Shown one piece after another: positions 1-57,298 of a DNA stretch of 64,000 nt. The stretch lies in the IMG/VR virus record IMGVR_UViG_3300047321_000238, positions 1 to 64,000 of that record; one strand, 5' to 3'. Numbering within the stretch: the first letter of the stretch is position 1; each line of letters starts with the position of its first letter. A program made the translations under genes and the position numbers. The notes beneath the pieces are model-generated. The model saw only the letters and a list, made by a program, of their open reading frames with translations. It was not told the origin of the DNA and searched no databases.

Positions 1-25
1 TTAGCTTCTTTGTAATTTCATTCAT
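1..25 (-). CDS. 5' end of next late gene (runs off the window)
   Basis: ATG (cat at 23-25) with AGGAGGA RBS at 32-38, overlapping the stop of the upstream giant gene. Confidence 0.55.
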
Positions 26-37
26 ACTATTTCCTCC

Positions 38-6000: not shown

Positions 6001-9000
6001 TTACTTCATTGATACCAGCAAGTCTTGCCATTTCACAATCTATTCTAAGAGGAGAACATGTCATAATCTTTCTATAATTGATTAATCTATCTACGCAGTT
6101 TCTAGGTAAAGATTGAAGATTAGAAATAGTAGTCTTATCTTTAGTCTTTATATTTATTTCAATAGAAGTATCAGATGCTCCGATATATTGAGACACATAA
6201 CCATCCATAGAAGTTAAAGACATTTTATTAAAGTTATTGTTATATATAATCGAAACATTTTCTACTATGCAATTCTCTATTGGATATGGATCGAATAACA
6301 TAGACTTAGAAGTTTCTAAATCCATAGAATCTTTCATTGCAGCTAATGCTTGATTTTGTTGGAATAATTCATCTCCAGTTAATAGCGTATCTGTTAACAC
6401 GTTTCCTTTTTCATCAGTTATAAGGCCATAGTCATTAGCTATACTATCTAATAGATTTGTATCAGCATCAATATAAGTATAAGTGTCAAAAGATCCTGGA
6501 GCAACTATATTAAATGCCCCTGTTAGACTATATTGTACGGTTGTAGTTTTACTATCTGATTTTGTAGTTTTAGTATCTTTATATACTAAACCAACAGAAA
6601 ACCCAACAGTGAAAGCATCGTCTACTAATAATGTATCTGTAGATATAGCAAAACTTTTAGCATATTCTTGTTTTACTTTTCTTAATATATCTGGACTGCA
6701 TTTTGACCAATCGATGATTAGTTTTAAACCAAGCATTAAATTAATAGCCGTATCTGAATTTAATACTTTAGATTCTCTAATAACTATTCCATAATCTTTA
6801 ATTATAGAAGTATCAAAAGTTGTTTTATCTTCAAAGATCTTTTTTAAGTTATTTTCTAAAGGAGCTAAGTACTTATTAAAGAAAGCTGTAGGACTTATCC
6901 CATCAAAGTAAAATCCTTTTTCTCCCTTATATGATTTTGAATCATACTCTCCAGCTATATAATTATCAAAGTTATAATCAGCTATATCTCTTTCAAGATA
7001 AGGTGAATAATAATCTGTATCTGCATTATAAACTGCATTTATTTTCTTTATATCATCGTTAGCTACAGCTAATGTTTTTACAACTGCGGAATTCATTTTA
7101 GCAATCTTAGCTAAGAATGCTTTTTCATCAGCAGTATAAGTTACTACAGTTTCAAAAGGTTTCTTTTCTAAAGCTTCTTTTAATTGCTTTCTCATTTTTA
7201 AATGTTCTTCATTAGCAATATAGAAATCTATTAATGGACTCTTAAACTTCATTGGTTGAAGTACTGTCTTTTGTCCTAAAGTAGCTTCTAAATATGGCTC
7301 AGAGTTATAGTCAAGTAAAATAGCAGCTTCTCCATTTTGAATAGCTCTTTGATAGTAGTATCTCATAACTGGAAAATGAATTGTTTGTGCAAACAAATTC
7401 GTAGTTAAGTCTTCTTTTTTATCAATGTTTGGAGGTAGTATTTCTGGCATGAATTGTCTATATTCAAAGTCTTGTAATCTAATAGTAGCTTGAATAGTTC
7501 TTGGAAAATTAGGTACAGTACTTATTTGTATGCTACTTAAACTTACCGCTTCTATATTTAATACTTGGTTTATATAGTTATTTGTAATTGGTAAGTAAGG
7601 AGTGAATTTAAATTGAGCTATTAATGCTCTTAATCCATTCATATAATACTTCATAGTTTCTCCAGTAGGAAGTGTTTCTTCATAAGGAACTCCATTGATT
7701 CCTGCATCACCATTAAAGTATAATTGCATTTCTATTATTCTTTCTGACTTTGGAATAGTCTTAGTTATAGCACCCTTTGCTCTAATCAAAGATGTTCTTT
7801 GAGAATTAGTTTGAGAAACTAATCTAATTGAAGTTGGAGGCACCATTAACAAACAGTCACCTATAAGTGCTGTGTATTCTTTTAAGCAACTCATATCTGA
7901 ACCTGTAATTGCCCTTTGTATCTTTTCTCTATCGTCTCCTCCATGTTCGCTATGAAAGTCATTAAACTCATCTACATATATTTGAGCATTCTTATCATAA
8001 GACCACATTTTAAATGCACCAGAGTTATAATTGAAGTTAGATTCATTTGCAGGAGAACTACTATAAGAAGGTAGAATTACATACTCATTAAATTGACTAG
8101 CTAAAAACTTAGCCACATTAATCCATAATCCACTTCCATATTTAGGATCATCAGATTTAATATACATAGCACCAAGTCCACGCCTATTAAAGTCTTGTCC
8201 AAAGTAATCGTAACCTAATCTAGTATAAGCCTTACCTTGTGTATTTGTAGCTTGATTGTACAAATATTCAAGAGCGAAAGATGGATCGTCAGACATTCTA
8301 ATTGCATCACCTCTATACTCTTCAGGTACAGCATCTTTTTGTTGCTTAAAGGTTGTCCCATCTAATACAAAAAGCATAGCAGTAGCACCCTTAATCATAT
8401 CTTCAAGCATTGCTTTCGCGTCTAAAGATTGTTTGTGATAATCTTGATCTCTATCTTTTCCATCAGCTGGTTCATCTAAGAAACAAATAGCATATATAGG
8501 CAGAGGAATTTTATTTCCATTATCATATGTTTCATCTAGCTCTACATCTTTCTCTATTATTTCATAATAAACTTCTTTATCTCCAGAATTAATTACTAAA
8601 AAAGTAACATATTTATCGTCTTTTCTTACGTTTGCATATTCTAAATCGACAACACCTGTCTTTTTATCTATTATAGGAGTATAGTCAAAATAAACAAAAG
8701 AAAAATTAGCTCTATCTAATGTTTTATATTTATTAAGGATAGTACCTGCAGTATCACTGAATATTTTATCATCAGGATTATTATATGTCGTTATATTAGT
8801 ATTTGACATTAAATCACCAAATTTAGCATATATTATCTTAGGTTCTGCAGGTACATAAGTAACACGGCAATGAGGGATTTCGGGTGCATTTACACCCAAT
8901 ATTCTTATACCAAGTTTATCAACAGTAGTCGATAAACCCATAGTATTATATAAGAAATTTTTAACAGTAGGATATTCTAATCCGTCTCCTGCAAAGATAA

Positions 9001-9283
9001 AAGGTCTACCTCCATCTTCCATATAATCATATTTTGTACCTACTGTATCTCCATCTGTTACAGTAACTTTACTTGAAGAAATAACAAATACGTTTTCTGC
9101 TTCATGATAACCTAATTGTTCTGAGAATGGATTCTCTAAGAAATATTGTCCACCATCTTTTCCGTCTAACATTTTCTTAGCGATATCTATAATCATGTCA
9201 TTATCTAAGTACTCTGACATGTCAGGAGTCTTTGTCCAATTTTCATTTATTATAGATTCTGTTTTCGTTTTAACATCTGCCAT
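38..9283 (-). CDS. Giant virion protein (3081 aa): N-terminal thermonuclease (SNase)-like domain plus baseplate-hub (gp27/Mu gp44-like) region
   Basis: SNase motifs VTDGDTV, IRILGVNAPEI and DFNRRGLG; hub-like segment GELIVMGDPAVKPYDKMFVYD...GMFEIETVVQTFSVDTGFTTSL; located in the tail module; GGAGG RBS. Confidence 0.6.
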   Translation of the reverse strand: MADVKTKTESIINENWTKTPDMSEYLDNDMIIDIAKKMLDGKDGGQYFLENPFSEQLGYHEAENVFVISSSKVTVTDGDTVGTKYDYMEDGGRPFIFAGDGLEYPTVKNFLYNTMGLSTTVDKLGIRILGVNAPEIPHCRVTYVPAEPKIIYAKFGDLMSNTNITTYNNPDDKIFSDTAGTILNKYKTLDRANFSFVYFDYTPIIDKKTGVVDLEYANVRKDDKYVTFLVINSGDKEVYYEIIEKDVELDETYDNGNKIPLPIYAICFLDEPADGKDRDQDYHKQSLDAKAMLEDMIKGATAMLFVLDGTTFKQQKDAVPEEYRGDAIRMSDDPSFALEYLYNQATNTQGKAYTRLGYDYFGQDFNRRGLGAMYIKSDDPKYGSGLWINVAKFLASQFNEYVILPSYSSSPANESNFNYNSGAFKMWSYDKNAQIYVDEFNDFHSEHGGDDREKIQRAITGSDMSCLKEYTALIGDCLLMVPPTSIRLVSQTNSQRTSLIRAKGAITKTIPKSERIIEMQLYFNGDAGINGVPYEETLPTGETMKYYMNGLRALIAQFKFTPYLPITNNYINQVLNIEAVSLSSIQISTVPNFPRTIQATIRLQDFEYRQFMPEILPPNIDKKEDLTTNLFAQTIHFPVMRYYYQRAIQNGEAAILLDYNSEPYLEATLGQKTVLQPMKFKSPLIDFYIANEEHLKMRKQLKEALEKKPFETVVTYTADEKAFLAKIAKMNSAVVKTLAVANDDIKKINAVYNADTDYYSPYLERDIADYNFDNYIAGEYDSKSYKGEKGFYFDGISPTAFFNKYLAPLENNLKKIFEDKTTFDTSIIKDYGIVIRESKVLNSDTAINLMLGLKLIIDWSKCSPDILRKVKQEYAKSFAISTDTLLVDDAFTVGFSVGLVYKDTKTTKSDSKTTTVQYSLTGAFNIVAPGSFDTYTYIDADTNLLDSIANDYGLITDEKGNVLTDTLLTGDELFQQNQALAAMKDSMDLETSKSMLFDPYPIENCIVENVSIIYNNNFNKMSLTSMDGYVSQYIGASDTSIEINIKTKDKTTISNLQSLPRNCVDRLINYRKIMTCSPLRIDCEMARLAGINEVIVESVDINTVPNFPGLYSVSIRLTSVDRTLRNREALKKIDVDTSHTNNDNSILSKNFFDFQNVLSKVELYPDLELPTLSELERLGYYFIRYKNEQGRVFPDADFYFVYLHAYSSEMFRKSIVTFFSDPANDKLMHDISGDLYGDEAQVSLNLTRDEKVTELITDLGGSSAYAAEIQKVYDDAEKSLSGSAPYASKEITDHVSAKQKQNVAKTKIILDLQESLEASSYSTYDFNHQIKVSIKDSIPYDEASHIISGGNTTEVMDDGSLRKDVPVDDVIKTTNEGLKKLIKRLLNKPITTGDSKNIMPEDMYNLINYITEDILAIGPVDKAFKAFTVNGDKLDSGTPISKNTNPENQYVITSSVPYFMNHKLRTALSSAATGRASVLDFDKDDKTKKIDEWIGTSTVQAIKADGTKYNTRNILTTCDGQGMSDYVIAETDEEVANGLVYGPFAIKKYDPKYLGAIYKSSILSGEHGFLDPYYNRSVYNIFYKKEIEKDPSREMKADQEATRIAEYIKGISDETWDNKEQVESFGYASIAMYRIMLVWFYKLLDDDKQSFLPASFYYLKNVTDILNGDNSESAQDANSIMSSVNNPLMGFWNLSKGIMGYGASFLSEENTFRREVETRKEDDDANAAIQDKLEQMKKDLKEALPITKINLVCGLFTTLGALAIGEFNTPIYEAIVGGNLSEYSNYIESMKASYLNYNKLNKTDLIMRRFFSYLDFDEYNNKNAWNKRIDPLKKYSTANKSQRMYLKAAEIPKIYLMHSFYDMVMHDMRGRMARAFPTYYMLLIDEGRDLGMWHLQDNFYDTSSISEFQVVKSRKIAADTANIMMTNLFGTFTSEDEDMKDEYQYTFRDAWNSIFSPRDYYTKEFTRRTEARDFNRAKLKPGARVHLRMGYEGDASRLPILFNGAVAEVATEGDMMNVICQGDGVELANPDMFNAADADTVADLKYTENMLGGLYGLFNEHTTPRDLLINPLTSSGTWIKSLIKDWSNSRFFNDNPFGIVHFGDKYYKEVFLTNGEMEQNIYEAINKPSWGTSGETSCNESLWAMETSPKIKVGLEGGKSYWDLMGIAASVSPEHIAAVVPFNLRSSIFYGAPRYYCAYDYAKTIDGKIVEKRKPFQQYHIYTSHTDIIGNKIAASDKEIRTVAVGIYKGDDWLSASTQTVGPMYLDIDIYPENQKMTTINCNFEHKSFDLPFTIPVAGKLTETFTEEGYKTAWRATANGLKNTVKDMYTGELIVMGDPAVKPYDKMFVYDTYQDMQGMFEIETVVQTFSVDTGFTTSLAPDCVVAVDDKYEKIAHSTIKAVALPVIANFITVATLSARFANITRSLYFSAAQSVSSGVKFSENIVNSIKTMAGADELATYSGVADGVLGKLGSAFSATASDYLIYSSISTLEKAYKALPTSHSFASSTDLVKFFEDIQGQSAALSKIDPMVLKTQLQEALKDTSILQNGLDLKAKQKIENAITKCDEYIASIGKAKATMGNVAIDAEYIQNIIAAVPKDKYAEEGALKTAMDYLETIKDSKVVAGSANFDEAIANLIVASNNVDDFTEEAGATADLLKSLKTLDKTVFEASTVSLENFGTLGKTFAEVNTVRKGAGALKALVSSNLIWLAAQVVLTKYAQEYIERKLKNLQVLTVFPVMKNNLVMTAGLNGNKGSVFDSPTYSQPGFIEDMAAKFFDGKYGSVYPFVLECLVDTTQMKETVNSYKRDSAFGSATSSTNAEKADLSNKMVKSVVKQEVSSVDAYKQLFLVPRVGNPISQEGRVAYKNNCFLDVSDPSTDARIEKELVYIFQEGDMQLLNAPSDNSRQVLLFSAQQESNSKDASGNAIGTIEMKVAPATLGTEGSSVRCKKIEQGDGILPVYDIPFLRPDARHVLTLIVQSVALELQPDALAKTSTLENLHAHNIIIHNATRLNEKSSWSNTGYSFTIQVKGYDGFGNILKKLHDEQEIIIKDQSTPTRVFNYKEDTSMGDNTYTVMISPAL

Positions 9284-9326: not shown

Positions 9327-12300
9327 TTACAGAGCATCTTTTATAGCTTTCTGAATATCTCTATCATTAATATTACCGTAGTTATCATTGATATTCATGC
9401 TTATATTTACAGAAGATGAAGTTCCGCTAGATATTGCTTGTTGAATAGCAGATATCGCATGGTTCTTACCTTTATCTGATCTAGCATTAATATTAACAAC
9501 ATAACCTTGTTGGCCTCCCATACTAGATGGCATCATACCTTGATCCATTAATCCTTGTTGTGGTTGTTGATAATCATTAGCTTCTTCCATAGCTTGAGTA
9601 TCTGCAGGTCTTGGTCTTCCTCCTACATATCCTAACATCATAACTCCTGCAGCAATTCCTACTGCACCCATTGCTATCTTGCTACCTTTAGCAGCTTTAA
9701 ACAAATCTGCAGCACCTTCAACAATTTTTCTACCGATACCTTTTGCTTCATCACCAAGTTCTTCTTCAGCTCCAGTTACGACTTTATCTATAATGTTTGG
9801 TCCTCCCATTATAGAATTTTTAGCTACATCGTTCATATCTAAGAATTTAAATATATCACTAATATCTGAATCAGATTTCTTCATAATATTAATATATGAG
9901 TCTTGAACGTTTGGAAGATTAGCTGATGATACAGGTCTAGTAATTGCTCCAGTAACACCTGCCATAGATTGTCCTACAGAAGAGTACTTTAAAAAATCTC
10001 CTGTATGTGCAACATCTTTCAAAGAACCTATTGTGTTTACAAAATCTCTTACCATTCTAGATTGTAACTTCTCTTTATTTTCCTTACTTTCCATCATAGT
10101 AGAGAAAGCTTGTTTAGTCAATGATTTTCCGCCATTTAATTCCTCAGCGGCTATATTTTGGAACGTCTTAGATTTATTCCAATAGTAATCATGGTCTACA
10201 TCCTCTACAACATATTTTTTAGACCATGCTTTCATGTCTTCTAAATGTTGATTCATATCTCCTTTTTTTCTAATGAAATTTTCAACACTATTGTTCCATT
10301 GTTTAGCTTTGTCTGGATCAAGTCCTTTAATAGAAGACTTAGAAGAGATAGCAGCTTCTTCTGTTAAATACATCATGTTATATAACAATGATGATTTGTA
10401 ATTATAATCTTCAGAAGTTTTATCCAACGCTGTCATTGCAATGTTCTTAACTTTATAGTTAGTTACATTTGTTTCACCGATACCATTTTTAGCAGCCTTA
10501 GCTACAAACTCATCTTTGTTTTGTTGATAAGCAGTTGCTATACGATATTCATCTACAGCATTCTTATAACCTGCATGGTCATCTTTAAACTGTTCTTTAA
10601 ATTTATCAATTACTACTTGATGACTTCCAGTATCCATTGCTAATTTAACATTATTAGAATGTTTAATTAACATCTTTTCCATATCTGAAAGAGAATAGTT
10701 TTTTGTATCCATCATAGCACTATAGACTTTTCCATCTATAATTCTTTGACTTGCAATATCTTCAATTCTATTTCCAGCTGTTGCAATTCCTTGTTCTTTT
10801 GCAACTCTATCTCTTACTTTTTGATCCCAATGGTGATTTTCATTAACAGCTCTTGTCATTAACATATCTTCTTGAGATTGTATGAATTCACTTTTTGAAG
10901 TATTTCCGTTATATACATAATTAGAATAAGACTTTCCATTATTATCAGTTATTCTAGCTATCGCAAAATTATCTCCATCATGGTCCATCTTCATAGAAGC
11001 TCCAGTATGACCTAATGCTTTTAACTGATTGCCTCTAAGAGTTGTATCTAGATATCCCATAACAACTTTATCTGAAGATTCTTGGTTACGAGGGAATCTA
11101 GTAGCTAAGAAAGTATCTCCATTAGTAGATAAATGTTTGACCATTTTCTCTTTAGCATCTGTTGCATTTACGAAATCTTTACCAAGAAATTCTTTCATAA
11201 AATCTTCTTTAAAGTATCCCATCTTTTCGAATGCTTCATGAGATGCACTTACCGCATCAATTAATTGACCTTTTGAATAACGTTTAAGTAACGTCTCTCC
11301 ATCGAACATAGCAGTATCTAAAAATGTTTTACCATTTAGATTCTTTAAGTTTTCATAAGTATCTTCACCTAAAGCCAGGTTCGTATTTATAGTTAAACTC
11401 GAAGCTTTACCAAAAACTGATTGAGAAAGTCTAGTAGATATTAAATCACCAGCTAAACCGTTTTTACTTGTTACATCATGCTTTTGCATTTCTTTGATTT
11501 CGCCAACAAGCTTTCTAGCATAATTTTGTTCACGAATTAAGTCATCTGAACCTTCTTTAAGATTTCCGCTATTAATTCTTTGTAATGAACTTTGTAAACT
11601 ACCTAATGATTTAATATGGTTAGTCTTAATTAAACTATCTTCAAAATGACGTTCTGGCATTCTAGCTATAGCTAAATGTTCTTCATTCCCACCTAATCCA
11701 GTCTTTATCATAATGTTATGACTATAAGGATTATTAGCTGCAGAAACTATAGTATTTCCTTGACCACCTATATCTAAATCTAACCAACCAGCTTCATGAG
11801 GTTTTAAGTTACTTAGATCAACTTCTTTAAAAGCATTGTATGCATTTTTGTTATTTGATACTAAAGCATCATATTTATCTTGTGAATAAACTTTAGAATT
11901 GAAGTCTAAAGCTCTAACTCCTTGTTGATAAGAATAAAGCTTTTCTGCTTTTTCTACAGATATCTCATGAGTTGAATCTTTATAGCTTTCTAACAAATGC
12001 TTATGAGTACGTTTATCTTTTCCTTTAAGGTCAGATAATCTTGTTTCTCCATATCCTATTAAAGTTCTACCTCTTAGTATTGAAGTAACTGGATCTAACA
12101 TACTTTTATTTAAATACTTTTCAGATATCTCTCCACTTTCATTTAAAGCATGCCCAAAGTATTTGTTGAATTCTGTAGGATTCATTCTTTCACGAGCTAA
12201 AGCCATTGAATCATTGTTATAGAATTCCTTTTGTAAATTCAAGTTCATTCTATTATCAAACTTTAAACCTTTTTGATTAGCTATGCCTTCAATTTGATTG

Positions 12301-15300
12301 TCTATATCAGCTATCCTAACTGAGTGGTCAAGTGTTTTATCTTTCCTCATTTCAGCTGTTAATTGATTACGTTCTTTAGATAATTCATTAATATCTACAT
12401 TGCTTGAGTAAGTTCCAGATTGATGATCGTATGCTTGAATTGTATGAGAGTAACCTGAATGGCCAACAACATTCTTCTTGTCATTTAACACAAGATTTTG
12501 ATTATTCAATACTTCTTGTAGAATCTTACCTTCTCCTCTTACTAACCCATACTTTGCAAAGTCCTTATCGAAGCCAGCTACATTAATCCTATCTACATCA
12601 TCAGTTATTAATGTACCATTCTTTATTTTTAACTTATCTCCAAAAAGAGCTTTATAGTATTTTCCAAGATCCTTTTTATTAATCTTCTCATTTCGTTGTA
12701 AACTCTCTATAATGTTAGTAGCAGCTAATGAAATAGATTCATGCTTAGTTGCTTCTAAACTTGTAGTTTGAGCTACTCCTTTAAATGCTGGGAATAATTC
12801 TTGTAATGTATCTGAGAAAGCAAATCTTTCTTTAAGTATTCTATCTTCAAAATTCTTTCCTAATTGAGGTGTTAAAAAATCTTCTATATATTCTCTTGAT
12901 AGGTATTGTCCATGAAGTCCTTTAAAGTTTTTAGATTCTAAATCTTTTGCTAAAGTAGAATCGATTGAACCAATAGCCATATCCATTGAATCAACAGTTG
13001 ATTTTTCTGAAGCATCATTATAAATCTTATGACCAAAGTTATCGTATTTATTAATAACTTGATAGTTGAAATTATACTCTTCATTTAAGAAGTCTAAAGC
13101 TGCTTGACCAGTTAGCTTTCTACTTTTAATAGCTTTATTAAGTTCTCTTTGAGATACGACATCTCCATGCTTATTAAAGAATCTACCTCTAAATACACCA
13201 TCAAATTTAGATTGAACTATATTCTTTTCTGAACCGAATGCTCCTAAGACTTGTTCTCTCTTTACTTCATATCCTAATTGATATTTAATATTGCCGTCTG
13301 CATCTATTGTAGGAACTAATTTATGACTTTCTTTAATTGCATTAATAACACTAATGTTTTGATTATGAGCTATTATTAATTCTTTTTTTGCATTAATTAA
13401 TTGTGAATTAGTTTTATAGAAAGCAGCGTATTGTACTCTAGAATCCATTATAGATTGTTGTTCATAAGTACTTAAACTCATTGCTTTCTCTGCTAATGCT
13501 TCGGAAGCTTTACTAAGTTCAGCTTGTGTTAATTTTCTTCCATAATTATTAGACAAGAATTTGCTGAATCTATTTGATTTACCTTCTCTTACTTTTATTA
13601 CATCATCAATAAATTGATTCTTTAAAGTATTAGAATCCATTTGCATATATTTCAATGTTAACCCGCCAGTGTATTTTCCATTGTGGTTAACATATTTGTC
13701 TCCAGCAGAAGACATTAACTTACCGCCAATTGACATGTTTTTTGCTAGTTCTGAATCTTTCTTTAGATATTCATTTATATCTTTTTTAAGATCACGTCTA
13801 TCATATAATACAGTGTTTTCTCTTTGAATAGAAACAGATCTTCCTGTCTTATCGAACTTAGCTATACCATGTTCGTATGAACTATTATCAACAGTTAAAA
13901 TACCTTTAGCTAAGTTTGTATCTTGAGTATGAGGATTTACTGTTTTAGCTAATTCCTTTAAATTTAAGCCATCGATATTTCCTAGATCAGCTCTTTCTTG
14001 AAGCATTGATAATATAGGATTAAGATATTCATCAAAGAATAAATTTTGTTCAGAAGCTAATAATTTGTTAATTTTATCAGGTCTGTAGTCTCCTTTTTTC
14101 ATTTTCTTAATCAAGTCTTTCATGCTTGCAGAAGACTTATCACTTATATTATAAGTTGTTTCTATTTCACTTAATAATCCAGAATGTTGTAATTCAGGCA
14201 AAATACCTACTATTGGATTAGTATTAAAATACATTGCTCTTTTTATTGTATTACTAAAATTAGCATTTTCTTTTCTAGGACCAATTTCTCTTAATACTCC
14301 TGAATCTTTTTTTATCTTATATAAAAGAGATTGAATAATATCTCTATCTCCGTCTCTTGCACTTTTAATAACTTCTTTATAAGTTCTAGTTTTACCTAAA
14401 GCTTCTTGTACATTTGAAGTTATTCTTACATGATCAAGAACATCATGAGCTGAGACATTACCTGGCTTACCTGTTCTAGATAGAATTTCATTTACATTTA
14501 AACTGAAGTTAGTTGCATAATCATTGTTGTTGATTCTATGATTAATAACTCCATCATTTAAAACGTATTTATACATATCAAAGAAATGTTGTTCTCCATT
14601 TCCATTCGTAAAGAACATGTTAGCATTTTTACCTCTACCATTTACGCCTAGAGTTATACCAGTGTCTTTAAGACCTTCAATCAATTGTTCTACTCTAGTA
14701 GTGGCATCTTGCTTACTGAATCCATATTGAGCCTTCATCCATTTTTGTTGATCTGAATTTAAACCCTTAATTTGCTTTTCAAAATCATTTTGTGAAAACG
14801 TCATGAAATAATTGTTTACTACATCTGAAACTAAAGTCTTATTTTTTTCATCAGCAATATAAGTTCTAGAGTTAACTGATTTCATTTCATTAGTAATTAA
14901 TGATTTTAATTTACCTGGCTCAACTCCTGCAATCATACCTGTTAAAGTATCTACATTAGAGTAATCTTGTATAGTTCTAGCAAACTCTAATCCAAAAGCA
15001 GGATTGTTTTTTCTTTCAACATCTACAAATGAATGCAATCTTGTTGTCATTTCATGATTTAATTGTGAATAATTACCGCCATTTTGGTATGAGAATACTT
15101 CTTCTTTTGATAAACCATTCCATACTCCTTTAAATCTAGGATCTTCCCCTATAGCATCATAAGCTGAATTTAAAGCAGTGAAACCAGCATTAGCTTTCTT
15201 GGATTCTTTTACATTCTTAAAGTCATTGCCATGGAACATGTTTAATAAACCATCATTCTTTGTTAAATCTAAAGAAATGAATTTGCTATTTTCTCCAGCA

Positions 15301-17930
15301 ACAGTATAACCTTGATGTGTTTTTTCTATCTCTGGAAATAAGTCTCCTCTTAAGAAATCTATTTTCTCTAATTCATCTCCTGTAAATATAGAAGATTTAG
15401 AATTACTTAATGTTTCAGTAGTTGCTCCAGGGAGTTGTTCTAATACATTGCTCATTACGCTTTGGAATATAAGATTCTTTTGAGCTTTTAATGCTTTAGA
15501 ACTAACACCTTTTGTTCCTTGACTTAAACCTAATTCAGCAAACACATCTTCCATAGTATTTAACAATGGACTTAACGCTTCTGAGTATTTATCTGTTATT
15601 AATGCATTTGCAACAGTTTCAGGCATCAGTCTCATTTCTTTAGTATTATGATCTTCCCACCCTAATGTTGCAGTTAGGTTTTCCATAAGTCCTTGAGTGA
15701 TATTAATTCCTGCAGTTTTATTCTTAGATATCATTTCTGCAATAGTTTGAGAAACTCTTTGATGAGTTGCGTTAGCAGCATTAGTTGTATATCTATGAAG
15801 TTTAGCTACATCTTCATACTCTAGTTTTCTAAGTTTTGATGCAGGACTATCTACATGCATTCTATAAGAACTTCTATCTTTTATCATTTCCCATGCTTTA
15901 TCTGGATCTTCTATGCTCTCTAAAATTACAGCTCCATTTTCATTTTTCATTGTTTTTAAATTTAGAGCTTTAAGATTGTCTTTCATGATATGCTCTTCAC
16001 CGTTTTCGCCAGCACGAGCTACATACGTTCCAGTCATAGTAGGTATTTGGTTCTCATTAGTTAATAGCGTATAGAAAACTGTAGAATCTTCGTAAGTAAC
16101 ATCTTTACCAAACTTAGCTTCAATCATTTTCTTAGTTTCATAAGGAGTAGATTTCATTACAGTTAATTTATCTAAAGTTGAGTATTCTTGATAGTATTGT
16201 CTATCACTAGGTATAGGTAATCCTAAATCTGTGAATGCTTTTTTCCATGCATCTCCTTCATGATTTAAATCAACACTAGAGAACTCGTGAGTATATAAAG
16301 CACCTGACTTAGGACCGTATCCTTGAATATCTTCTTTAGTTACTTTTCCATCAGCACTTATTCTGAAACCATCATAAGTTTTATATGAACCATCTATTGG
16401 ATTATGAGAAAAACTTAATCCACCCTTATTAGAATTCCAATTCTTTTTTCCTGTCTTATCCATAAGGAATACAGCTTTTCCGCCATTTCTATCTGTCATA
16501 GGAATATTATGTTTTAAGTCAGTTAATTTGCTATTAACTTTCTTAGTCATTCCAAACATATATTCACCATAAGACATATCTTTACCATTTATATTTATAG
16601 AATTGTCTGCAAATATATGAAATAAGTTATTTTCATCAGCCTGTGCATTATGGGCAGATACTGACTTGTTTCTTCCTTTATTAAATAGGAAGTTAAATTG
16701 ATCTTCAGTAGCTATACCGAATTTTCCAGTAGCTTGCATTCCTTGTGGTATATGAGAAGCTTGACCAAAGTTTTCTTGAGCATATTTTACAGATTGATAT
16801 AAATCTACATGCTTTCCAGCTTCGTGTCCTACATTTTCTCCTAATATCATTCTTGCACCTGGATCATCGAATATGTCACCATTTTGAGATATAGCAACAC
16901 GATTGTTATATGTTAATCCAGGAGTACTGTTGCTTATTCCTCCATATACTAAATCAGTATATTGTTTAGTATATTTTTTCTTATAATCAGATAATGTTCC
17001 TAATCCATTTTCAGCCAAGTATTGTTCTTGACGCTTACCTATATTTCTATATTCATCAAGACCAATTAAAGCGTTATCTATATTCTTTGTTATATTATCT
17101 GGATCATCAGCACCCGTAATTCTAAATTCAAATCCATTATCTTCATTTTGTTTCACTTTAAAAGTAGGATCACTTAATAAACTTAATCTGCTAATATATA
17201 CGTTATCTCTACCAGTAAGTTCATTAGGAGTTTTACCTCTTAAGCTTGTAATATAATTTTTTACCTCTTGGTGTTCTTCATGTGTAAAACCAGCTACACT
17301 ATTAAGAGTATCTATTGGATTTTTAGATTTAACACCGTTTGCGTTTACTCCCCAAACAGAAGCTGAGAATTCAGTAATATAATCGAATTGTTGATGTCCT
17401 TCCGCATTTACTCCACCTAAAGTTTCTAAATCGTAACTTATAATATTTCCACCATTTTTCATGATGTCCATATAGTTATTGAAAGATCTATATAAGTCTT
17501 GGAAATCAGTCATTTCTGTTTTTGTTGTTCTATTATAATTAGTATAATTAATATCATGAGCCATACCTATAACATTTTTAATTAGTTGAGCACCAGATTC
17601 TTGTTTAGTTAAAGTAGATAAGTTTCCTGATATGCCTTGAAAGAATCCGCCTTTATATAAATTTCCATAAACAGCTTCTCCGATTTTAGAATCACTTTTA
17701 AAACTAGTAGGCTTCTTAAAATCTTTTGATTCTGTAGATAGAACTGTTATAGTATCACTAAAATCTGTTATAAAATCTTTCATCCCTGGATGTATTCCAG
17801 CAACAGTATTTCTTTCTTGATCGCTCATGCCTTTATATAAATCACTATCTAGTATTTTTCTTCTATTATTAGTTTGTTCTTTATTAAATTGATTTGCACT
17901 TTTTCTACTAAGCCACAATTTTTTAAACAT
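9327..17930 (-). CDS. Giant single-chain two-barrel RNA polymerase-like protein (2867 aa) with N-terminal DEDDh exonuclease domain; candidate virion RNAP
   Basis: Beta'-like: KNGLAGDLISTRLSQS, TRFP and MDHDGD. Beta-like: YEQQSI and GHKIYNDASEK (K-x7-K). DEDDh: YDLET, NGDIFD, HNAQAD. C-terminal hydrophobic helix. Confidence 0.7.
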   Translation of the reverse strand: MFKKLWLSRKSANQFNKEQTNNRRKILDSDLYKGMSDQERNTVAGIHPGMKDFITDFSDTITVLSTESKDFKKPTSFKSDSKIGEAVYGNLYKGGFFQGISGNLSTLTKQESGAQLIKNVIGMAHDINYTNYNRTTKTEMTDFQDLYRSFNNYMDIMKNGGNIISYDLETLGGVNAEGHQQFDYITEFSASVWGVNANGVKSKNPIDTLNSVAGFTHEEHQEVKNYITSLRGKTPNELTGRDNVYISRLSLLSDPTFKVKQNEDNGFEFRITGADDPDNITKNIDNALIGLDEYRNIGKRQEQYLAENGLGTLSDYKKKYTKQYTDLVYGGISNSTPGLTYNNRVAISQNGDIFDDPGARMILGENVGHEAGKHVDLYQSVKYAQENFGQASHIPQGMQATGKFGIATEDQFNFLFNKGRNKSVSAHNAQADENNLFHIFADNSININGKDMSYGEYMFGMTKKVNSKLTDLKHNIPMTDRNGGKAVFLMDKTGKKNWNSNKGGLSFSHNPIDGSYKTYDGFRISADGKVTKEDIQGYGPKSGALYTHEFSSVDLNHEGDAWKKAFTDLGLPIPSDRQYYQEYSTLDKLTVMKSTPYETKKMIEAKFGKDVTYEDSTVFYTLLTNENQIPTMTGTYVARAGENGEEHIMKDNLKALNLKTMKNENGAVILESIEDPDKAWEMIKDRSSYRMHVDSPASKLRKLEYEDVAKLHRYTTNAANATHQRVSQTIAEMISKNKTAGINITQGLMENLTATLGWEDHNTKEMRLMPETVANALITDKYSEALSPLLNTMEDVFAELGLSQGTKGVSSKALKAQKNLIFQSVMSNVLEQLPGATTETLSNSKSSIFTGDELEKIDFLRGDLFPEIEKTHQGYTVAGENSKFISLDLTKNDGLLNMFHGNDFKNVKESKKANAGFTALNSAYDAIGEDPRFKGVWNGLSKEEVFSYQNGGNYSQLNHEMTTRLHSFVDVERKNNPAFGLEFARTIQDYSNVDTLTGMIAGVEPGKLKSLITNEMKSVNSRTYIADEKNKTLVSDVVNNYFMTFSQNDFEKQIKGLNSDQQKWMKAQYGFSKQDATTRVEQLIEGLKDTGITLGVNGRGKNANMFFTNGNGEQHFFDMYKYVLNDGVINHRINNNDYATNFSLNVNEILSRTGKPGNVSAHDVLDHVRITSNVQEALGKTRTYKEVIKSARDGDRDIIQSLLYKIKKDSGVLREIGPRKENANFSNTIKRAMYFNTNPIVGILPELQHSGLLSEIETTYNISDKSSASMKDLIKKMKKGDYRPDKINKLLASEQNLFFDEYLNPILSMLQERADLGNIDGLNLKELAKTVNPHTQDTNLAKGILTVDNSSYEHGIAKFDKTGRSVSIQRENTVLYDRRDLKKDINEYLKKDSELAKNMSIGGKLMSSAGDKYVNHNGKYTGGLTLKYMQMDSNTLKNQFIDDVIKVREGKSNRFSKFLSNNYGRKLTQAELSKASEALAEKAMSLSTYEQQSIMDSRVQYAAFYKTNSQLINAKKELIIAHNQNISVINAIKESHKLVPTIDADGNIKYQLGYEVKREQVLGAFGSEKNIVQSKFDGVFRGRFFNKHGDVVSQRELNKAIKSRKLTGQAALDFLNEEYNFNYQVINKYDNFGHKIYNDASEKSTVDSMDMAIGSIDSTLAKDLESKNFKGLHGQYLSREYIEDFLTPQLGKNFEDRILKERFAFSDTLQELFPAFKGVAQTTSLEATKHESISLAATNIIESLQRNEKINKKDLGKYYKALFGDKLKIKNGTLITDDVDRINVAGFDKDFAKYGLVRGEGKILQEVLNNQNLVLNDKKNVVGHSGYSHTIQAYDHQSGTYSSNVDINELSKERNQLTAEMRKDKTLDHSVRIADIDNQIEGIANQKGLKFDNRMNLNLQKEFYNNDSMALARERMNPTEFNKYFGHALNESGEISEKYLNKSMLDPVTSILRGRTLIGYGETRLSDLKGKDKRTHKHLLESYKDSTHEISVEKAEKLYSYQQGVRALDFNSKVYSQDKYDALVSNNKNAYNAFKEVDLSNLKPHEAGWLDLDIGGQGNTIVSAANNPYSHNIMIKTGLGGNEEHLAIARMPERHFEDSLIKTNHIKSLGSLQSSLQRINSGNLKEGSDDLIREQNYARKLVGEIKEMQKHDVTSKNGLAGDLISTRLSQSVFGKASSLTINTNLALGEDTYENLKNLNGKTFLDTAMFDGETLLKRYSKGQLIDAVSASHEAFEKMGYFKEDFMKEFLGKDFVNATDAKEKMVKHLSTNGDTFLATRFPRNQESSDKVVMGYLDTTLRGNQLKALGHTGASMKMDHDGDNFAIARITDNNGKSYSNYVYNGNTSKSEFIQSQEDMLMTRAVNENHHWDQKVRDRVAKEQGIATAGNRIEDIASQRIIDGKVYSAMMDTKNYSLSDMEKMLIKHSNNVKLAMDTGSHQVVIDKFKEQFKDDHAGYKNAVDEYRIATAYQQNKDEFVAKAAKNGIGETNVTNYKVKNIAMTALDKTSEDYNYKSSLLYNMMYLTEEAAISSKSSIKGLDPDKAKQWNNSVENFIRKKGDMNQHLEDMKAWSKKYVVEDVDHDYYWNKSKTFQNIAAEELNGGKSLTKQAFSTMMESKENKEKLQSRMVRDFVNTIGSLKDVAHTGDFLKYSSVGQSMAGVTGAITRPVSSANLPNVQDSYINIMKKSDSDISDIFKFLDMNDVAKNSIMGGPNIIDKVVTGAEEELGDEAKGIGRKIVEGAADLFKAAKGSKIAMGAVGIAAGVMMLGYVGGRPRPADTQAMEEANDYQQPQQGLMDQGMMPSSMGGQQGYVVNINARSDKGKNHAISAIQQAISSGTSSSVNISMNINDNYGNINDRDIQKAIKDAL

Positions 17931-18000
17931 ATATTCAAATCCTTTCTCTACATTGCTATAAATTCCTATTACTATAGAAATGTAATAATATAATAAATAA

Positions 18001-18020
18001 GACCTACAAAAAAGTAGGTC
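18001..18020 (-). terminator. Probable intrinsic terminator
   Basis: gacctac-aaaaaa-gtaggtc hairpin followed by a T-rich run on the minus strand, just after the 18036 stop. Confidence 0.55.
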
Positions 18021-18035
18021 CTATCCAGTTTTATT

Positions 18036-18849: not shown

Positions 18850-21800
18850 CTAAAATAATTTGTATAAAGCATTTTGAACTTTTTGATTTAAATTATATTG
18901 TGTTACTCTTCCGATGTTGGTTATTACTTGTAACCCTGAAGCAGAGGTAGGTTCTACGGATACATCTACGCTATGCAAGCCAACGCCATTTAATAATCCT
19001 AACATATCTCTTTGTAGAGCAAGAGGAGATGGACCATTATGAATATCTTTTATCTCTGGAGCTTTTTGGTATGCAGGTTCATTTTTATTTGAATCATACA
19101 TTCCAAAGTCAGATAATAACATACCTTCATTTTCTATAGTCTTCATCTTAATATTTTCTAAGTTCTCATCTGGCCTCCAACCTGCCCAAAACATATTAGG
19201 TAGATTGTGATTACTAAAGAAAGATTTATTAGATTTAGCTTTATCAACTTTTTCTCCCCATAAAACTTTTAAAGCTTTTTGTTTGTAAGGAGAAATCATC
19301 TTAAGTATCTTCTTCCTAGCTCTAGGATCTTTCTCTTTAGCAAACTCTAAGAAATAGTCTCTATCGTATTTAGGTAAAGCTCTAAGTACATCAGCCGCTG
19401 AAGAGTTATTTGTTAAACCATATATAGTTGTGTCTGCAGCTTTCTTATAAGCTAAAGCTGCTTTAGTATATTTGCCCATTTTATAATACTGTTCAGGAGT
19501 TTGTAACTTATATATTGCATTGCTAATATTGTAATCAAGTTGTTTCTTTACTTTAGCATCGATAGTATATTTATCTACTCTTTCTTTTTGCTTCTGTAAT
19601 CTTAATATTGCTTTCTGATTCTTTTTTTGATTGTATTCAAATTTGTTAACAATAGCTGCAATATTAACGCCGTCTTTTCTCTTAGATAGTCGTGCTGCTT
19701 TATTATATAAACCCATGTACTTCATGTATTCTAATCTGTCAAAGTACTCTTCTAATTCCCACTTCTTTTTAGTGTTCTTAGGAATGTACTTGCCAAACAT
19801 CTCATGATAGTTAAAGCTAGGATTTTTAATAGCTGATAATCCTACTCCGATAACTGCTCCAGCAATTGCCCCTTTTCCACCGCCAATTGTTTCTCCTTCT
19901 TTTTCTGCTATCTTTAATGCATTAGCTAAACCAGGAAACTTATTAGCTGGAACTTTTAATTGTCTAGCAACTGCGAATCCAGCCATACCGAAGTTAGCTG
20001 CACTTGCAATAGGATTATTTAAATGAGCAAATCCATAACCTAAAAATCCAATGGTTGCTGATATATTTGCACCATTCTTAGAATTCCAAACAGAAGCTTT
20101 AGATCCCCAATTCATTCTAGGAATTGCTCCAATAATTCCACCAGTTAAAGCATATGGATTAGTGAAAGCGAATAAAGCATGTGATGCCCATTTAGCTTTT
20201 CCTTCTAAACCTTTAGCTCTAGCTTGATTAGACCAGTACCAACTTGCTAAACCAAGAGCTTGAACTCCTAACCCTTTAGACCAACCAGTTTGTAATGTTG
20301 GCATAATGAATCCTTTAATAGGATGTCCCCATGTAGAATAGTTTGTTCCATATACTTGTTCTTTCTTATAAGATTCCATTGGATCATCTATTCTTAAATA
20401 CTTGTTATGAAGATAAGGAATTTGAGCATGAGCAATTCTTTCAAATATAGGGCCCATCATCTTATTAGAATCACCAGCAGCAAATAATTGATCAGCTAAA
20501 GTATCTTGACTATATTTCTCTTTAGCTTTCTTTTCTTCCCACATCTTCTTTGAGATACTTTCAGCTCCAACATTAACTAATGCACTAATAGATCCAGTAT
20601 TATCTCTTTGTCTAAATTTATTGTTTTCGTATTGTAATTCTACAATCATACCTGGCTTTAAGTATTCATGAATATAACTTTTCTTATTTTCATCATTAAG
20701 AGGCTTGACTCCAGCTAGAGTATATTGTTCATCACTACCGACTACTGTAAATCCTCCAGCATTAGCTACAGTGTTAATAACAGCGTGTCTAGTTTCCATC
20801 TTCTTTCCTGCAAATTGATAATTGTAGAATTTGTGATCGCTAGATTGAACCTTAACCCTCTTTTCTATTTGAGCCATTTCAGTTTTCATTTGAGGAGTTA
20901 ATGATGTTTCTTTCGCAATCTTTTTCCATGTCTTATACTCATCTGAACCAGGAGATATATCTGCTAAGATTTTGTATCTATCAAATGCACCATATCTTCC
21001 ATAACTATCTGGATGTAATTTATTTAAAGTTTCATATCCAGCACCAGGAAGTCTAGCTTCTCCTTTAGTTACTTTCGTATAAGGATCTCCTGTTTGATAT
21101 CTTTCAGGCATCCATAATGGCATAGTATTTCTAAGTGGATTAACTTGTTCGATATCATGGTTTTCATGTGGGAAGAAACGTCTAGCGATTTCCATGAAGT
21201 CTCCACCCATACCGCCTACGCCTTCATCCCAGAATCCTCGAACAAAAGAATTCATTTGTCCAGCTTTTTCTAATTGATATCCATGGCTAGCAGGTAACAT
21301 TGAATCAGCTAAGAATCCATACATACCTGATAATTGTTTAGCTGAGTACATTATGCTAGAAACATAATCACTCTTAGAACCTATTTCATTAACATGTATA
21401 TCATTAAGATATTTATCCTTAGCATTAGCAGCAGCCATAGTGAACGGTATATTTTGTAGTTTAGTATTTTCATTTATAACGCCGTTATCTTGGAATTCGT
21501 TAGCATTATTGCCTCTTGTTTTAATACCTTGATTAACTCCAGCTATTAATGACATTGCAGTTGAACCTGTTGTTAATCCACTAGTTACAAGTCTAGATAA
21601 GCCACTAGTTAACATGTCGCTAATAACTCCACTAGGTTCTTGATTTACATTAACATATTGAACTTGAGTGCCACTACCTCCACCTCTTATAACTGGAACA
21701 ACTGTATGATCAACTCCAGCTAGAGTTTCAGGATATCTTTCTCCATCAAATCCTGCAGATGTTACTTTACCTCTACTATTAAACTTAAGACTATATACAG

Positions 21801-25035: not shown

Positions 25036-25109
25036 TAATTTCACCTCCAAAAAAAAGATAATAATAAAAGCTTGTTAACTTCTATTACTATCTCTTTTAA
25101 TCTCTATAA

Positions 25110-30190: not shown

Positions 30191-30211
30191 TTAATATTCC
30201 TCCCTAAAAAA

Positions 30212-30248
30212 ATATAAGAGATGTAGCTCTTGTCCACATCTCTTATAT
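30212..30248 (-). terminator. Intrinsic terminator after tail tube gene
   Basis: atataagagatgt...acatctcttatat inverted repeat followed by a T-run on the minus strand. Confidence 0.7.
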
Positions 30249-57156: not shown

Positions 57157-57298
57157 TAAATCTAAGACTAATAAGACTACTGAAGGATTGTTCGTAATCT
57201 TTCAATGCATGGGCCTATAGTATTTGAACTTAGGCACTATGAGTGACAGGGATAATGGGGTACAAATAAAAATATATGATGAAAAGGATGGATACAAA

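What the first reader, a model, noticed from the sequence alone, without database searches (positions are those of the whole stretch)
9327..17930. Hidden single-chain beta/beta'-type RNA polymerase inside the virion module (candidate injected RNAP)
Seen, in N-to-C order: YEQQSI (about 13449-13466), a GYEVKREQVLG segment, GHKIYNDASEK (about 13002-13034), KNGLAGDLISTRLSQS (about 11420-11465), TRFP (RFP at 11091-11099) and MDHDGD (DHDGD at 10971-10985). Established: cellular RNAP beta has FEDSI, GAEVxxGDIL and GDK-x7-K, with two catalytic-centre lysines 8 residues apart as here. Beta' has KQGRFRQNLLGKRVDYS, then R-x-P about 35 residues before NADFDGD; here the gap is 38. Inference: both double-psi barrels are fused in one 2867-aa chain. 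Its location among tail genes and its C-terminal hydrophobic helix (IAMGAVGIAAGVMMLGYVGG) suggest it is packaged and ejected to transcribe early genes, conceptually like crAss-like phage gp66 but in a Firmicutes myovirus. Routine annotation would probably call it hypothetical or tape measure.
Basis: partly seen in the sequence, partly recalled or inferred. Interest (0 to 1): 0.92.

Follow-up and report, generated by a model that had tools for sequence, protein, structure and literature searches.

The report
Hidden virion RNA polymerase, jumbo phage
A 2,867-residue "hypothetical" protein encoded among the tail genes of a 248-kb phage contains a cell-type (two-barrel) RNA polymerase fused to a DNA-polymerase-style exonuclease, which suggests the phage injects its own transcription enzyme and adds an unrecognised lineage to the few known virion RNA polymerases.

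Summary
ORF 9327-17930 (-) encodes 2,867 aa and every motif sits at the stated coordinates. No sequence library recognises the protein (Pfam, PHROGs, PDB, GenBank phages).

In 161 family members, K1635, E1642 and K1643 are kept in 156-159, and R2278, P2280 and D2316/D2318/D2320 in 160.

An AlphaFold model of residues 1420-2600 (pLDDT 88.8) matches only two-barrel RNA polymerases:

The gene occupies the slot of Bacillus phage 0305phi8-36 gp146, a "hypothetical tape measure" found in virions by mass spectrometry. Bacillus phage WH1 gp095 is a sequence homologue at the same position.

The genome also encodes a second, YonO-like RNAP candidate (57224-62242) and a sigma factor.

Best reading: a virion-delivered early RNA polymerase, a new variant of the crAss gp66 / P23-45 gp96 kind. 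Packaging, ejection and activity are inferred, not shown.

The parts
9327..17930 (-). Whole ORF of 2,867 aa: giant multidomain protein (candidate virion RNA polymerase)
   Evidence: There are 55 close and about 168 cluster-level homologues, nearly all 2,600-3,300 aa with the same layout.
17994..18027 (-). Terminator-like hairpin directly upstream of the ORF
   Evidence: 14-pair stem followed by a T-run; 0.2 expected in shuffles.
17965..17973 (-). AGTAATAGG, a near copy of the AGTAATATA motif found upstream of many structural genes (possible late promoter). The AAAGGA ribosome-binding site lies at 17940-17945.
   Evidence: Read from the sequence; function is inferred.
16521..17453 (-). DEDDh (DnaQ/epsilon-like) 3'-5' exonuclease domain, residues ~160-470. 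Catalytic D167, E169, D355, H427 and D432 are invariant.
14760..16520 (-). Residues 471-1057: confidently folded alpha/beta domains of unknown function
   Evidence: pLDDT mostly 80-95. No convincing fold match.
13956..14759 (-). Residues 1058-1325: possible N-terminal extension of the RNAP module (beta-lobe-like)
10131..13673 (-). Residues 1420-2600: two-barrel RNA polymerase catalytic core
12951..13295 (-). Beta-like double-psi barrel, residues ~1546-1660, with the basic pair K1635 and K1643 (GHK-x7-K)
   Evidence: Beta-strands fall at model residues 135-229. K1635 is kept in 156 of 161 members and K1643 in 159 of 161. Single-chain RNAP alignments span model 1-1150.
11445..11999 (-). Clamp-like domain, residues ~1978-2162
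10836..11465 (-). Beta'-like double-psi barrel, residues 2156-2365: K2156-x-G ... R2167, R2278-F-P, and the metal-binding D2316-H-D-G-D2320 (10971-10985)
   Evidence: Isolated DPBB domains superpose on model 750-946 at about 2.2 A. Beta' alignments start at model 736-737 opposite beta' 333-336. R2278, P2280 and D2316/D2318/D2320 are kept in 160 of 161 members.
10776..10889 (-). Long helix directly after the catalytic barrel, residues 2348-2385 (bridge-helix position)
   Evidence: helix at model 929-966. The assignment is inferred from position only.
10272..10406 (-). Two helices flanking a low-confidence loop, residues 2509-2553, with invariant E2524, I2528, S2529 and K2531 (trigger-loop-like)
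   Evidence: The assignment is inferred.
9618..9680 (-). Single hydrophobic helix, residues 2751-2771, followed by the conserved GGRPRPAD
9330..9533 (-). Conserved C-terminal domain, residues ~2800-2867, shared with positional counterparts in related phages (candidate virion-incorporation or anchoring module)
   Evidence: The C-terminal HMM hits WH1 gp095 at E 5.5e-10 and Moorella CDS0031 at E 2e-4. The same helix-plus-domain pattern is visible by eye in 0305phi8-36 gp146, where the HMM hit is not significant.
18850..25050 (-). Upstream giant gene (2,066 aa), counterpart of 0305phi8-36 gp145, with several Gly-rich hydrophobic stretches. It is the more tape-measure-like of the two.
38..9283 (-). 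Downstream giant gene (3,081 aa), counterpart of the baseplate hub with cell-wall-degrading domains
   Evidence: phrog_20474, DUF6046; synteny.
57224..62242 (+). Second, non-virion RNAP candidate (YonO/QDE-1-like), 4 kb into the opposite-strand gene block
   Evidence: RHP...KHDGMDFDIDAxQ is invariant. It holds the only PF05183 signal in the genome. Atlas features point to viral PF05183 clusters. It co-occurs with vRNAP homologues on the same contigs.

Best explanation
The ORF encodes a single-chain, two-barrel (beta/beta'-type) DNA-dependent RNA polymerase embedded in a giant multidomain virion protein.

Shown:
- Residues 1420-2600 fold as a two-barrel RNAP core.
- A beta-like barrel carries the basic pair K1635/K1643.
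- A clamp-like domain is present.
- A beta'-like barrel carries RFP and the Mg-binding DHDGD.
- Residues ~160-470 are a DEDDh 3'-5' exonuclease with a complete, invariant catalytic set.
- The C-terminus carries one hydrophobic helix and a small conserved domain.
- The gene lies between the tail chaperone / gp145-like gene and the baseplate hub.

Inferred:
- The protein is made late with the tail proteins and built into the virion through its C-terminal module.
- It is ejected into the cell with or ahead of the DNA, the hydrophobic helix possibly engaging the membrane.
- It transcribes the first phage genes without host RNAP.
- Those first genes include the YonO-like second RNAP (57224-62242), which takes over early/middle transcription.
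- A phage sigma factor then redirects host RNAP, probably to the late (structural) genes.
- The exonuclease acts on nucleic acid ends at entry. Its target is unknown.
For: Fold:
- AF2 pLDDT 88.8.
- Every top hit in four independent libraries is a two-barrel RNAP.
- In BFVD the top hits are giant phage proteins and phage RNAP subunits.

Catalytic residues:
- They are the best conserved positions across 161 members.

Exonuclease:
-.

Virion context:
- Terminase, portal, capsid, sheath and tail genes lie on the same strand.
- The same gene order is conserved in close and distant relatives and in cultured phages.
- The counterpart in 0305phi8-36 (gp146) was identified in virions by mass spectrometry according to its GenBank record.
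- WH1 gp095 is a sequence homologue (E 4.8e-9; C-terminal module E 5.5e-10) and is annotated as a virion structural protein.

Precedent:
- P23-45 gp96, a tail-tape-fused vRNAP with DFDGD, transcribes the pre-early genes, including the nvRNAP gene.

Two-RNAP logic:
-.
- Sigma factor.
- The nvRNAP candidate sits 4 kb from the strand-divergence point.
Against: - There is no direct evidence of packaging, ejection or activity for this protein or any family member.
- Sequence homology to the MS-verified gp146 is not statistically significant. Only the exonuclease motifs, the C-terminal pattern and the position are shared, and gp146 lacks the RNAP module.
- WH1's 'virion structural protein' label may be homology-derived.
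- The folded core (about 130 kDa, with a clamp) is too bulky for a tail-tube lumen unless it is partly unfolded.
- Residues 140-2600 are globular rather than an extended tape-measure helix, so the storage site (head or tail) is unknown.
- No early-promoter motif was found.
- Substrate (NTP or dNTP) and template are not deducible.
Confidence: 0.65

Rival explanations
1. It is a two-barrel nucleotide polymerase with a different job: a primase, an RNA-dependent RNA polymerase, or a PolD-like DNA polymerase whose fused epsilon-like exonuclease proofreads. It would act on the incoming genome or in replication rather than in transcription.
For: - A DnaQ-type exonuclease is the classic partner of DNA polymerases.
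- The best fold match, QDE-1, has both RNA- and DNA-templated activity.
- The residue two positions before the first Asp is K, not the N of NADFDGD.
Against: - The exonuclease also occurs in counterparts that have no polymerase module (0305phi8-36 gp146 and Moorella CDS0027), so it does not need the polymerase.
- All characterised phage single-chain two-barrel enzymes (YonO, gp66, gp96, gp64) are DNA-dependent RNAPs.
Confidence: 0.12
2. It is an active RNAP that is not packaged. It would be a late-expressed, non-virion enzyme that merely sits in the structural operon.
For: - Packaging was not tested.
- A terminator-like hairpin and a separate promoter-like motif precede the gene, so it could be regulated apart from its neighbours.
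Against: - The position between the tail chaperones / gp145-like gene and the hub is conserved across very distant relatives.
- The C-terminal module is shared with virion proteins.
- A separate nvRNAP candidate already exists in the early region.
Confidence: 0.08
3. It is essentially a structural tail or ejection protein (tape measure) in which the RNAP-like region is a catalytically dead scaffold.
For: - It occupies the locus annotated as tape measure in 0305phi8-36.
- It has a C-terminal hydrophobic helix typical of tape-measure and ejection proteins.
Against: - The Asp triad, RxP and the Lys pair are the most conserved residues of the aligned RNAP-core region in 161 sequences, which is the signature of purifying selection on catalysis.
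- The protein is globular, not an extended helix.
- The neighbouring 2,066-aa protein looks more like a tape measure.
Confidence: 0.05

Closest known systems
Thermus phage P23-45 gp96, the tail-tape-measure-fused virion RNAP (PDB 8H2M/8H2N; Chaban et al. 2024, PMC10770324)
   Same: - Single-chain two-barrel RNAP hidden in a giant tail-module protein.
- DxDGD metal motif with an RxP upstream.
- Undetectable by sequence searches.
- The phage also encodes a second, non-virion two-barrel RNAP.
   Different: - No detectable sequence homology.
- The host phage is a siphovirus with a 5,002-aa true tape measure, and the RNAP is at its N-terminus. Here the phage is a jumbo myovirus and the RNAP is central (residues 1420-2600).
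- This protein has an N-terminal DEDDh exonuclease.
- No extended tape-measure region was predicted for residues 140-2600.
- A clamp-like domain is present, whereas gp96 is clamp-less.
crAss-like phage phi14:2 gp66 virion RNAP (PDB 6VR4; Drobysheva et al.)
   Same: - Giant virion-module protein with both barrels in one chain.
- Proposed to be ejected to transcribe early genes.
- Aligns over model 1-1153 against gp66 902-1651.
   Different: - gp66 carries DFDxD and belongs to a podovirus of Bacteroidota.
- gp66 has no exonuclease domain.
QDE-1 / YonO / P23-45 gp64-type single-chain two-barrel RNAPs (Pfam PF05183 clade; PDB 2J7N, 7Y7P, 8F5M, 8F72)
   Same: - No SBHM 'flap' insertion is evident between the beta-like motifs.
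   Different: - There is no PF05183 or other Pfam hit.
- This protein is about three times larger, lies in the tail module, and has extra exonuclease and C-terminal modules.
- The genome's actual PF05183-like gene is the other one, at 57224-62242.
Bacillus phage 0305phi8-36 gp146 ('hypothetical tape measure protein', found in virions by mass spectrometry)
   Same: - Same locus: tail chaperonins, then gp145, then gp146, then the hub.
- Similar size (2,537 aa).
- DEDDh motifs, a C-terminal hydrophobic helix and a small terminal domain.
   Different: - gp146 has no RxP...DxDxD and no RNAP module.
- Sequence similarity is not significant.
- The only known RNAP of 0305phi8-36 is orf99, of the PF05183 type.
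Bacillus cereus phage vB_BceM_WH1 gp095 and Acinetobacter phage vB_AbaM_ME3 ME3_36 (both annotated without function)
   Same: - WH1 gp095 (2,515 aa) has the same locus and carries RYP...ADHDGD. It hits the RNAP profile at E 4.8e-9 and the C-terminal profile at E 5.5e-10.
- ME3_36 (1,603 aa) has the same locus, carries REP...GGDHDQD and a C-terminal hydrophobic helix, and gives a BFVD fold hit at E 1.4e-8.
   Different: - Both are far more divergent than the metagenomic family.
- No exonuclease motifs were found in either.
- Neither has been described as an RNAP in the papers searched.
Coliphage N4 vRNAP and phiKZ/AR9 multisubunit vRNAPs
   Same: - The concept is the same: a virion-carried RNAP makes early transcription independent of the host.
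- N4 vRNAP is likewise a ~3,500-aa protein with a central polymerase and terminal domains for ejection and encapsidation (abstracts; established knowledge).
   Different: - N4 vRNAP is T7-like (right-hand fold), not two-barrel.
- The phiKZ/AR9 enzymes are split into 4-5 subunits. Their beta' fragments are only local fold matches here.

Membership tests
Two-barrel (double-psi beta-barrel) RNA polymerase superfamily | Two double-psi beta-barrel domains forming one active-site cleft | tested here: met
   The AF2 model superposes on QDE-1, gp62/gp64, gp96, gp66 and PolD over model residues 1-1150. Isolated DPBB domains fit model 750-946 at about 2.2 A.
Two-barrel (double-psi beta-barrel) RNA polymerase superfamily | DxDxD metal-binding triad in the beta'-type barrel, preceded by [RK]xP within 20-100 residues (the filter used by Chaban et al.) | tested here: met
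   R2278-F-P lies 38 residues before D2316-H-D-G-D. These residues are kept in 160 of 161 members. The filter is quoted.
Two-barrel (double-psi beta-barrel) RNA polymerase superfamily | Two conserved basic residues in the beta-type barrel | tested here: met
   K1635 is kept in 156 of 161 members and K1643 in 159 of 161. Both lie on adjacent strands at model 215-229. Their placement at the active site is inferred.
Two-barrel (double-psi beta-barrel) RNA polymerase superfamily | Template-dependent rNTP polymerisation | not testable with these tools
   Needs biochemistry.
Pfam PF05183 RdRP / YonO family | Significant match to the family profile | tested here: not met
   There is no Pfam hit for this ORF. 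The genome-wide PF05183 scan signals only in the other gene, at 58796-58972.
crAss-like gp66 vRNAP family | Sequence homology to gp66 and the DFDxD motif | tested here: not met
   [not shown]
P23-45 gp96-type tape-measure-fused vRNAP | RNAP domain fused to a bona fide extended, length-determining tape measure with a metallopeptidase | tested here: not met
   Residues 140-2600 are predicted to be globular. No peptidase domain was found. Only the locus, the C-terminal hydrophobic helix and the DxDGD motif are shared.
P23-45 gp96-type tape-measure-fused vRNAP | Presence in virions and transcription of pre-early genes | not testable with these tools
   Only indirect evidence is available: the positional counterpart gp146 was found in virions by mass spectrometry.
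DEDDh (DnaQ-like) 3'-5' exonucleases | RNase H-like fold with Exo I (DxE), Exo II (Nx2-3[FY]D) and Exo III (Hx4D) motifs | tested here: met
   [not shown]
Phage tape measure proteins | Gene directly after the tail chaperone pair; largely extended alpha-helical protein; length proportional to tail length | tested here: inconclusive
   The locus is one giant gene removed from the chaperone-like genes, as for gp146. The predicted structure is globular. Tail length is unknown. The linker at residues 2600-2750 was not modelled.

The most novel reading that the evidence does not exclude
0305phi8-36-like jumbo myoviruses carry a previously unrecognised, independently evolved lineage of tail-module virion RNA polymerases. 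It comprises about 168 clusters at 50% identity and includes cultured Bacillus and Acinetobacter phages.

In this reading, a clamp-bearing two-barrel RNAP core was inserted into an ancestral exonuclease-bearing ejection or 'tape measure' protein. The result is a single injected polypeptide that couples an active epsilon-like 3'-5' exonuclease to transcription. It would launch a three-tier programme: vRNAP, then a YonO-like nvRNAP, then host RNAP with a phage sigma factor.
Probability: 0.45. Interest if true: 0.85.

Novelty: new variant of a known kind. Interest (0 to 1): 0.78.

Why it matters
Only a few routes to host-independent early transcription are known in phages: N4-type vRNAP, phiKZ-type multisubunit vRNAP, crAss gp66 and P23-45 gp96.

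This finding would add a widespread lineage of large myoviruses that no sequence library recognises. It would give a testable function to the largest "hypothetical" gene of cultured phages (WH1 gp095, ME3_36). It would also show that the giant tape-measure-locus proteins of the 0305phi8-36 group are enzymatic cargo rather than rulers.

The fusion of a two-barrel RNAP with an epsilon-type exonuclease has not been described in the literature searched. It bears on how two-barrel polymerases diversified, including the RNAP to PolD question. The clamp-bearing core raises the mechanical question of how such a protein is stored and passed through a contractile tail.

Tried and rejected
- Sequence libraries gave nothing for the ORF:
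  - Pfam and PHROGs.
  - phmmer and profile searches against PDB sequences.
  - megablast and tblastn against 50,697 GenBank phages.
- Atlas feature searches of the N-terminal half and the RNAP core were uninformative, with scores of 0.76-0.83 and no families.
- Profile-profile comparison of the vRNAP and nvRNAP families showed no similarity.
- hhalign and HMMs against 0305phi8-36 gp146 and Moorella CDS0027 stayed non-significant, apart from the Moorella C-terminal fragment. Homology to the MS-verified gp146 therefore rests on position and motifs.
- The A2 profile found nothing in the Moorella, 0305phi8-36 or ME3 genomes.
- The A3 profile found nothing in four cultured relatives, and a final alignment search did not extend the nvRNAP family.
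- Pfam on all nvRNAP family members gave no PF05183 hit, and the PDB profile search for that family gave only noise.
- Foldseek of the 1,200-residue N-terminal model against the PDB was insignificant. Only the non-Foldseek search resolved the exonuclease.
- A k-mer search for an early-promoter motif found only Shine-Dalgarno words and a late-gene motif.
- I considered and rejected a classical tape measure because the models are globular.
- I considered and rejected a T7/N4-type RNAP because no such fold matches appeared.
- The Chaban et al. survey table of viruses with two RNAPs was searched by catalytic-motif and phage-name terms (DHDGD, DFDID, 0305phi8, YonO). The matches were all of other kinds: phiKZ-related and other jumbo phages, a crAss-like virus, and YonO-type siphoviruses.
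Full report
**1. Observation**

The minus-strand ORF 9327-17930 is intact, 2,867 aa, with an ATG start. It is preceded by an AAAGGA ribosome-binding site, a terminator-like hairpin (17994-18027) and an AGTAATAGG motif. The only discrepancy is two bases in one motif. The R2278 to D2316 gap is 38 residues, and K1635 and K1643 are eight residues apart.

**2. Nothing in sequence libraries recognises the protein**

- Pfam and PHROGs give no credible hit.
- phmmer and a 56-sequence profile find no PDB chain.
- megablast and tblastn against GenBank phages find nothing.

A routine pipeline would therefore leave it hypothetical.

**3. It belongs to a large, uniform, unnamed family**

A word-seeded search returned 55 proteins of 22-57% identity. 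All are about 2,800-3,050 aa and all are unannotated, from contigs of up to 370 kb. An exhaustive profile search of 1.84 billion representatives found 168 clusters. Nearly all are 2,600-3,300 aa with the matched module at residues ~1,400-2,700.

- K1635, E1642, K1643
- K2156, G2158, R2167
- R2278, P2280, S2286
- D2316, D2318, G2319, D2320

Extending to 161 members, K1635/E1642/K1643 survive in 156-159 and R2278/P2280/D2316/D2318/D2320 in 160. All 160 database members of at least 2,400 aa have RxP...DxDxD. The middle residue of DxDGD varies freely (H, F, N, S, A, Y and others). This is what purifying selection on an RNAP active site would produce.

**4. Structure of the core**

An AlphaFold2 model of residues 1420-2600, built with this alignment, is confident (mean pLDDT 88.8, pTM 0.87).

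- Foldseek against the PDB: the top 50 are all largest or beta' subunits of RNA polymerases. They include the AR9 and phiKZ non-virion RNAPs (E 5e-5 and 8e-5) and bacterial, archaeal and Pol I enzymes.
- Swiss-Prot AlphaFold models give beta'/RPA1 for all 30 top hits.

A long helix follows the catalytic barrel in the bridge-helix position. A helix / disordered loop / helix element carries the invariant E2524, I2528, S2529 and K2531 in a trigger-loop-like arrangement. Both of these assignments are inference.

**5. The rest of the protein**

A second model, of residues 140-1339 (pLDDT 84.7, pTM 0.73), is globular throughout. Foldseek on the whole model was uninformative.

The C-terminus has the protein's only strongly hydrophobic segment (residues 2751-2771). 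The conserved GGRPRPAD and a conserved terminal domain of about 65 residues follow it.

**6. Genomic context**

The window is the first 64 kb of a complete 247,883-bp virus genome of 30.5% GC. Its ends overlap by 127 nt.

Terminase, portal, capsid, sheath, tube paralogues and tail proteins lie on the same strand. Then come two chaperone-position genes, a 2,066-aa protein, two small ORFs, this ORF, and a 3,081-aa hub/lysin protein. The order is the same in a 57%-identical relative and in a 22-25%-identical one.

The nearest terminases are from Moorella phage MTATph1 (43%), Bacillus phages WH1, Edson and 0305phi8-36 (29-36%), and Acinetobacter phage ME3 (28%). All four phages whose structural modules I inspected share the same block:

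- **0305phi8-36.** The order is tail chaperonins gp143/144, then gp145 (virion), then gp146 (2,537 aa, 'hypothetical tape measure protein; identified as virion protein by mass spectrometry'), then the gp147 hub. Hardies et al. assigned the tape measure role mainly from length, and noted that only the last ~60 residues align between relatives. gp146 has DEDDh motifs, a C-terminal hydrophobic helix and a terminal domain, but no DxDxD.
- **Moorella phage MTATph1.** The counterpart is split by an IS21-type insertion. It keeps the exonuclease and the C-terminal module (HMM E 2e-4) and lacks the RNAP.
- **WH1.** gp095 (2,515 aa, 'virion structural protein') has RYP...ADHDGD. It is hit by the RNAP profile (E 4.8e-9 per genome, the only hit) and by the C-terminal HMM (E 5.5e-10).
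- **ME3.** ME3_36 (1,603 aa) has REP...GGDHDQD and a C-terminal hydrophobic helix. Its predicted structure is among the top three BFVD matches (E 1.4e-8).

So the locus encodes a virion protein with a shared C-terminal module. Its interior carries an exonuclease, an RNAP core, or, as here, both.

**7. A second RNAP and a sigma factor**

The 1,672-aa ORF at 57224-62242 (+) lies 4 kb into the opposite-strand block, which runs to 185 kb. It has RHP and KHDGMDFDIDAxQ invariant in 11 homologues. Those homologues occur on the same contigs as vRNAP homologues, for example the 166,432-bp and 138,770-bp contigs.

It holds the only PF05183 signal in the genome, although below the family cut-off. The same search of control genomes signals only in B. 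subtilis, the host of the SPbeta prophage that encodes YonO. Its language-model features point to viral PF05183 clusters (score 0.90, 173 features shared). 0305phi8-36 likewise has a PF05183-type orf99.

A sigma-70 region-2 domain over the Pfam cut-off lies at 132.6 kb. An AGTAATATA-like motif precedes many structural genes.

**8. Mechanism**

*Shown:* the fold, the conserved catalytic residues, the exonuclease, the context, and sequence homology to a protein annotated as a virion structural protein in WH1.

*Inferred:* late synthesis, incorporation into the virion via the C-terminal module, ejection, transcription of the first genes including the YonO-like RNAP, and a later hand-over to host RNAP with the phage sigma factor. 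The model follows P23-45, where the tape-fused gp96 transcribes the pre-early genes including the nvRNAP gene.

*Unknown:*
- where a clamp-bearing core of about 130 kDa is stored
- how it passes through the tail
- what the exonuclease targets
- which promoter is used; none was found

**9. Rivals**

- A polymerase with another role, such as a primase, an RdRP, or a PolD-like DNA polymerase with a proofreading exonuclease. It is not excluded, but it is disfavoured by the ranking of fold hits and because the exonuclease also occurs without the polymerase.
- A non-packaged late RNAP. It is disfavoured by the conserved locus and the shared C-terminal module.
- An inactive structural relic. It is contradicted by near-absolute conservation of the catalytic residues.

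**10. Novelty**

I found no paper describing this family or its cultured members as RNA polymerases. I searched the two-RNAP survey table of Chaban et al. by catalytic-motif and phage-name terms. The matches belonged to phiKZ-related and other jumbo phages, a crAss-like virus and YonO-type siphoviruses.

The kind of system is known: a single-chain two-barrel RNAP hidden in a giant virion protein (crAss gp66, P23-45 gp96). The lineage, the host phage type (a jumbo contractile-tailed phage of the 0305phi8-36 group), the central position of the core, the clamp and the fused DEDDh exonuclease are new. I therefore rate it a new variant of a known kind, with high interest.

Noticed in passing
window 57224-62242 (+): A 1,672-aa ORF with RHP...KHDGMDFDIDAxQ invariant in 11 homologues. 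It holds the only (sub-threshold) PF05183 signal in the genome, and its Atlas features match viral RdRP-family clusters. It is a probable YonO-like non-virion RNA polymerase near the start of the opposite-strand gene block. One homologue carries a Rho_N/SAP-like N-terminal domain.
   Followed up: partly
G000:C1:132600-132743 (outside the window): A sigma-70 region-2 domain over the Pfam cut-off, in a 416-aa ORF. The phage probably also redirects host RNA polymerase for one gene class.
   Followed up: no
window 18811, 25081, 30246, 33992, 39379, 52895, 52937 (minus strand); also 17965-17973: An AGTAATATA-like 9-mer lies 31-100 nt upstream of many structural genes. It is a candidate late-promoter element, reminiscent of a -10-only late promoter.
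   Followed up: partly
window 18850-25050 (-): A 2,066-aa protein, counterpart of 0305phi8-36 gp145 (a virion protein). It has several Gly-rich hydrophobic stretches near residues 800-830 and 1560-1700, and no family hit. It is the more tape-measure-like of the two giants.
   Followed up: partly
window 38-9283 (-): A 3,081-aa protein with DUF6046 and a 580-residue match to phrog_20474 ('endolysin'). It is the counterpart of the hyperplastic baseplate hub gp147 of 0305phi8-36.
   Followed up: no
L005:15593-23140 (Bacillus phage vB_BceM_WH1 gp095) and L004:23173-27984 (Acinetobacter phage ME3 ME3_36): Two cultured phages carry unannotated proteins at the same locus with RxP...DHDGD / DHDQD. The WH1 protein is a profile-level sequence homologue and the ME3 protein is a fold-level match. 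Both are ready experimental models for this enzyme.
   Followed up: partly
L001:30512-37868 (Moorella phage MTATph1): The counterpart gene appears split by an IS21-type element (a transposase CDS0028 and an IstB-like ATPase CDS0029). The exonuclease-bearing N-part lies in CDS0027 and the conserved C-terminal module in CDS0031.
   Followed up: partly
window 26418-30927 (-): Three adjacent ORFs of 349, 907 and 218 aa all hit phrog_9206, which is labelled 'major head protein'. By position after the sheath they are tail-tube paralogues, as in 0305phi8-36 gp140/141, so the PHROG label looks misleading.
   Followed up: no
genome ends (window 1-127 and G000 247757-247883): The exact 127-nt end overlap is typical of an assembler k-mer. 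The record is a closed circle in assembly terms, and the true physical ends and terminal repeat are unknown.
   Followed up: yes
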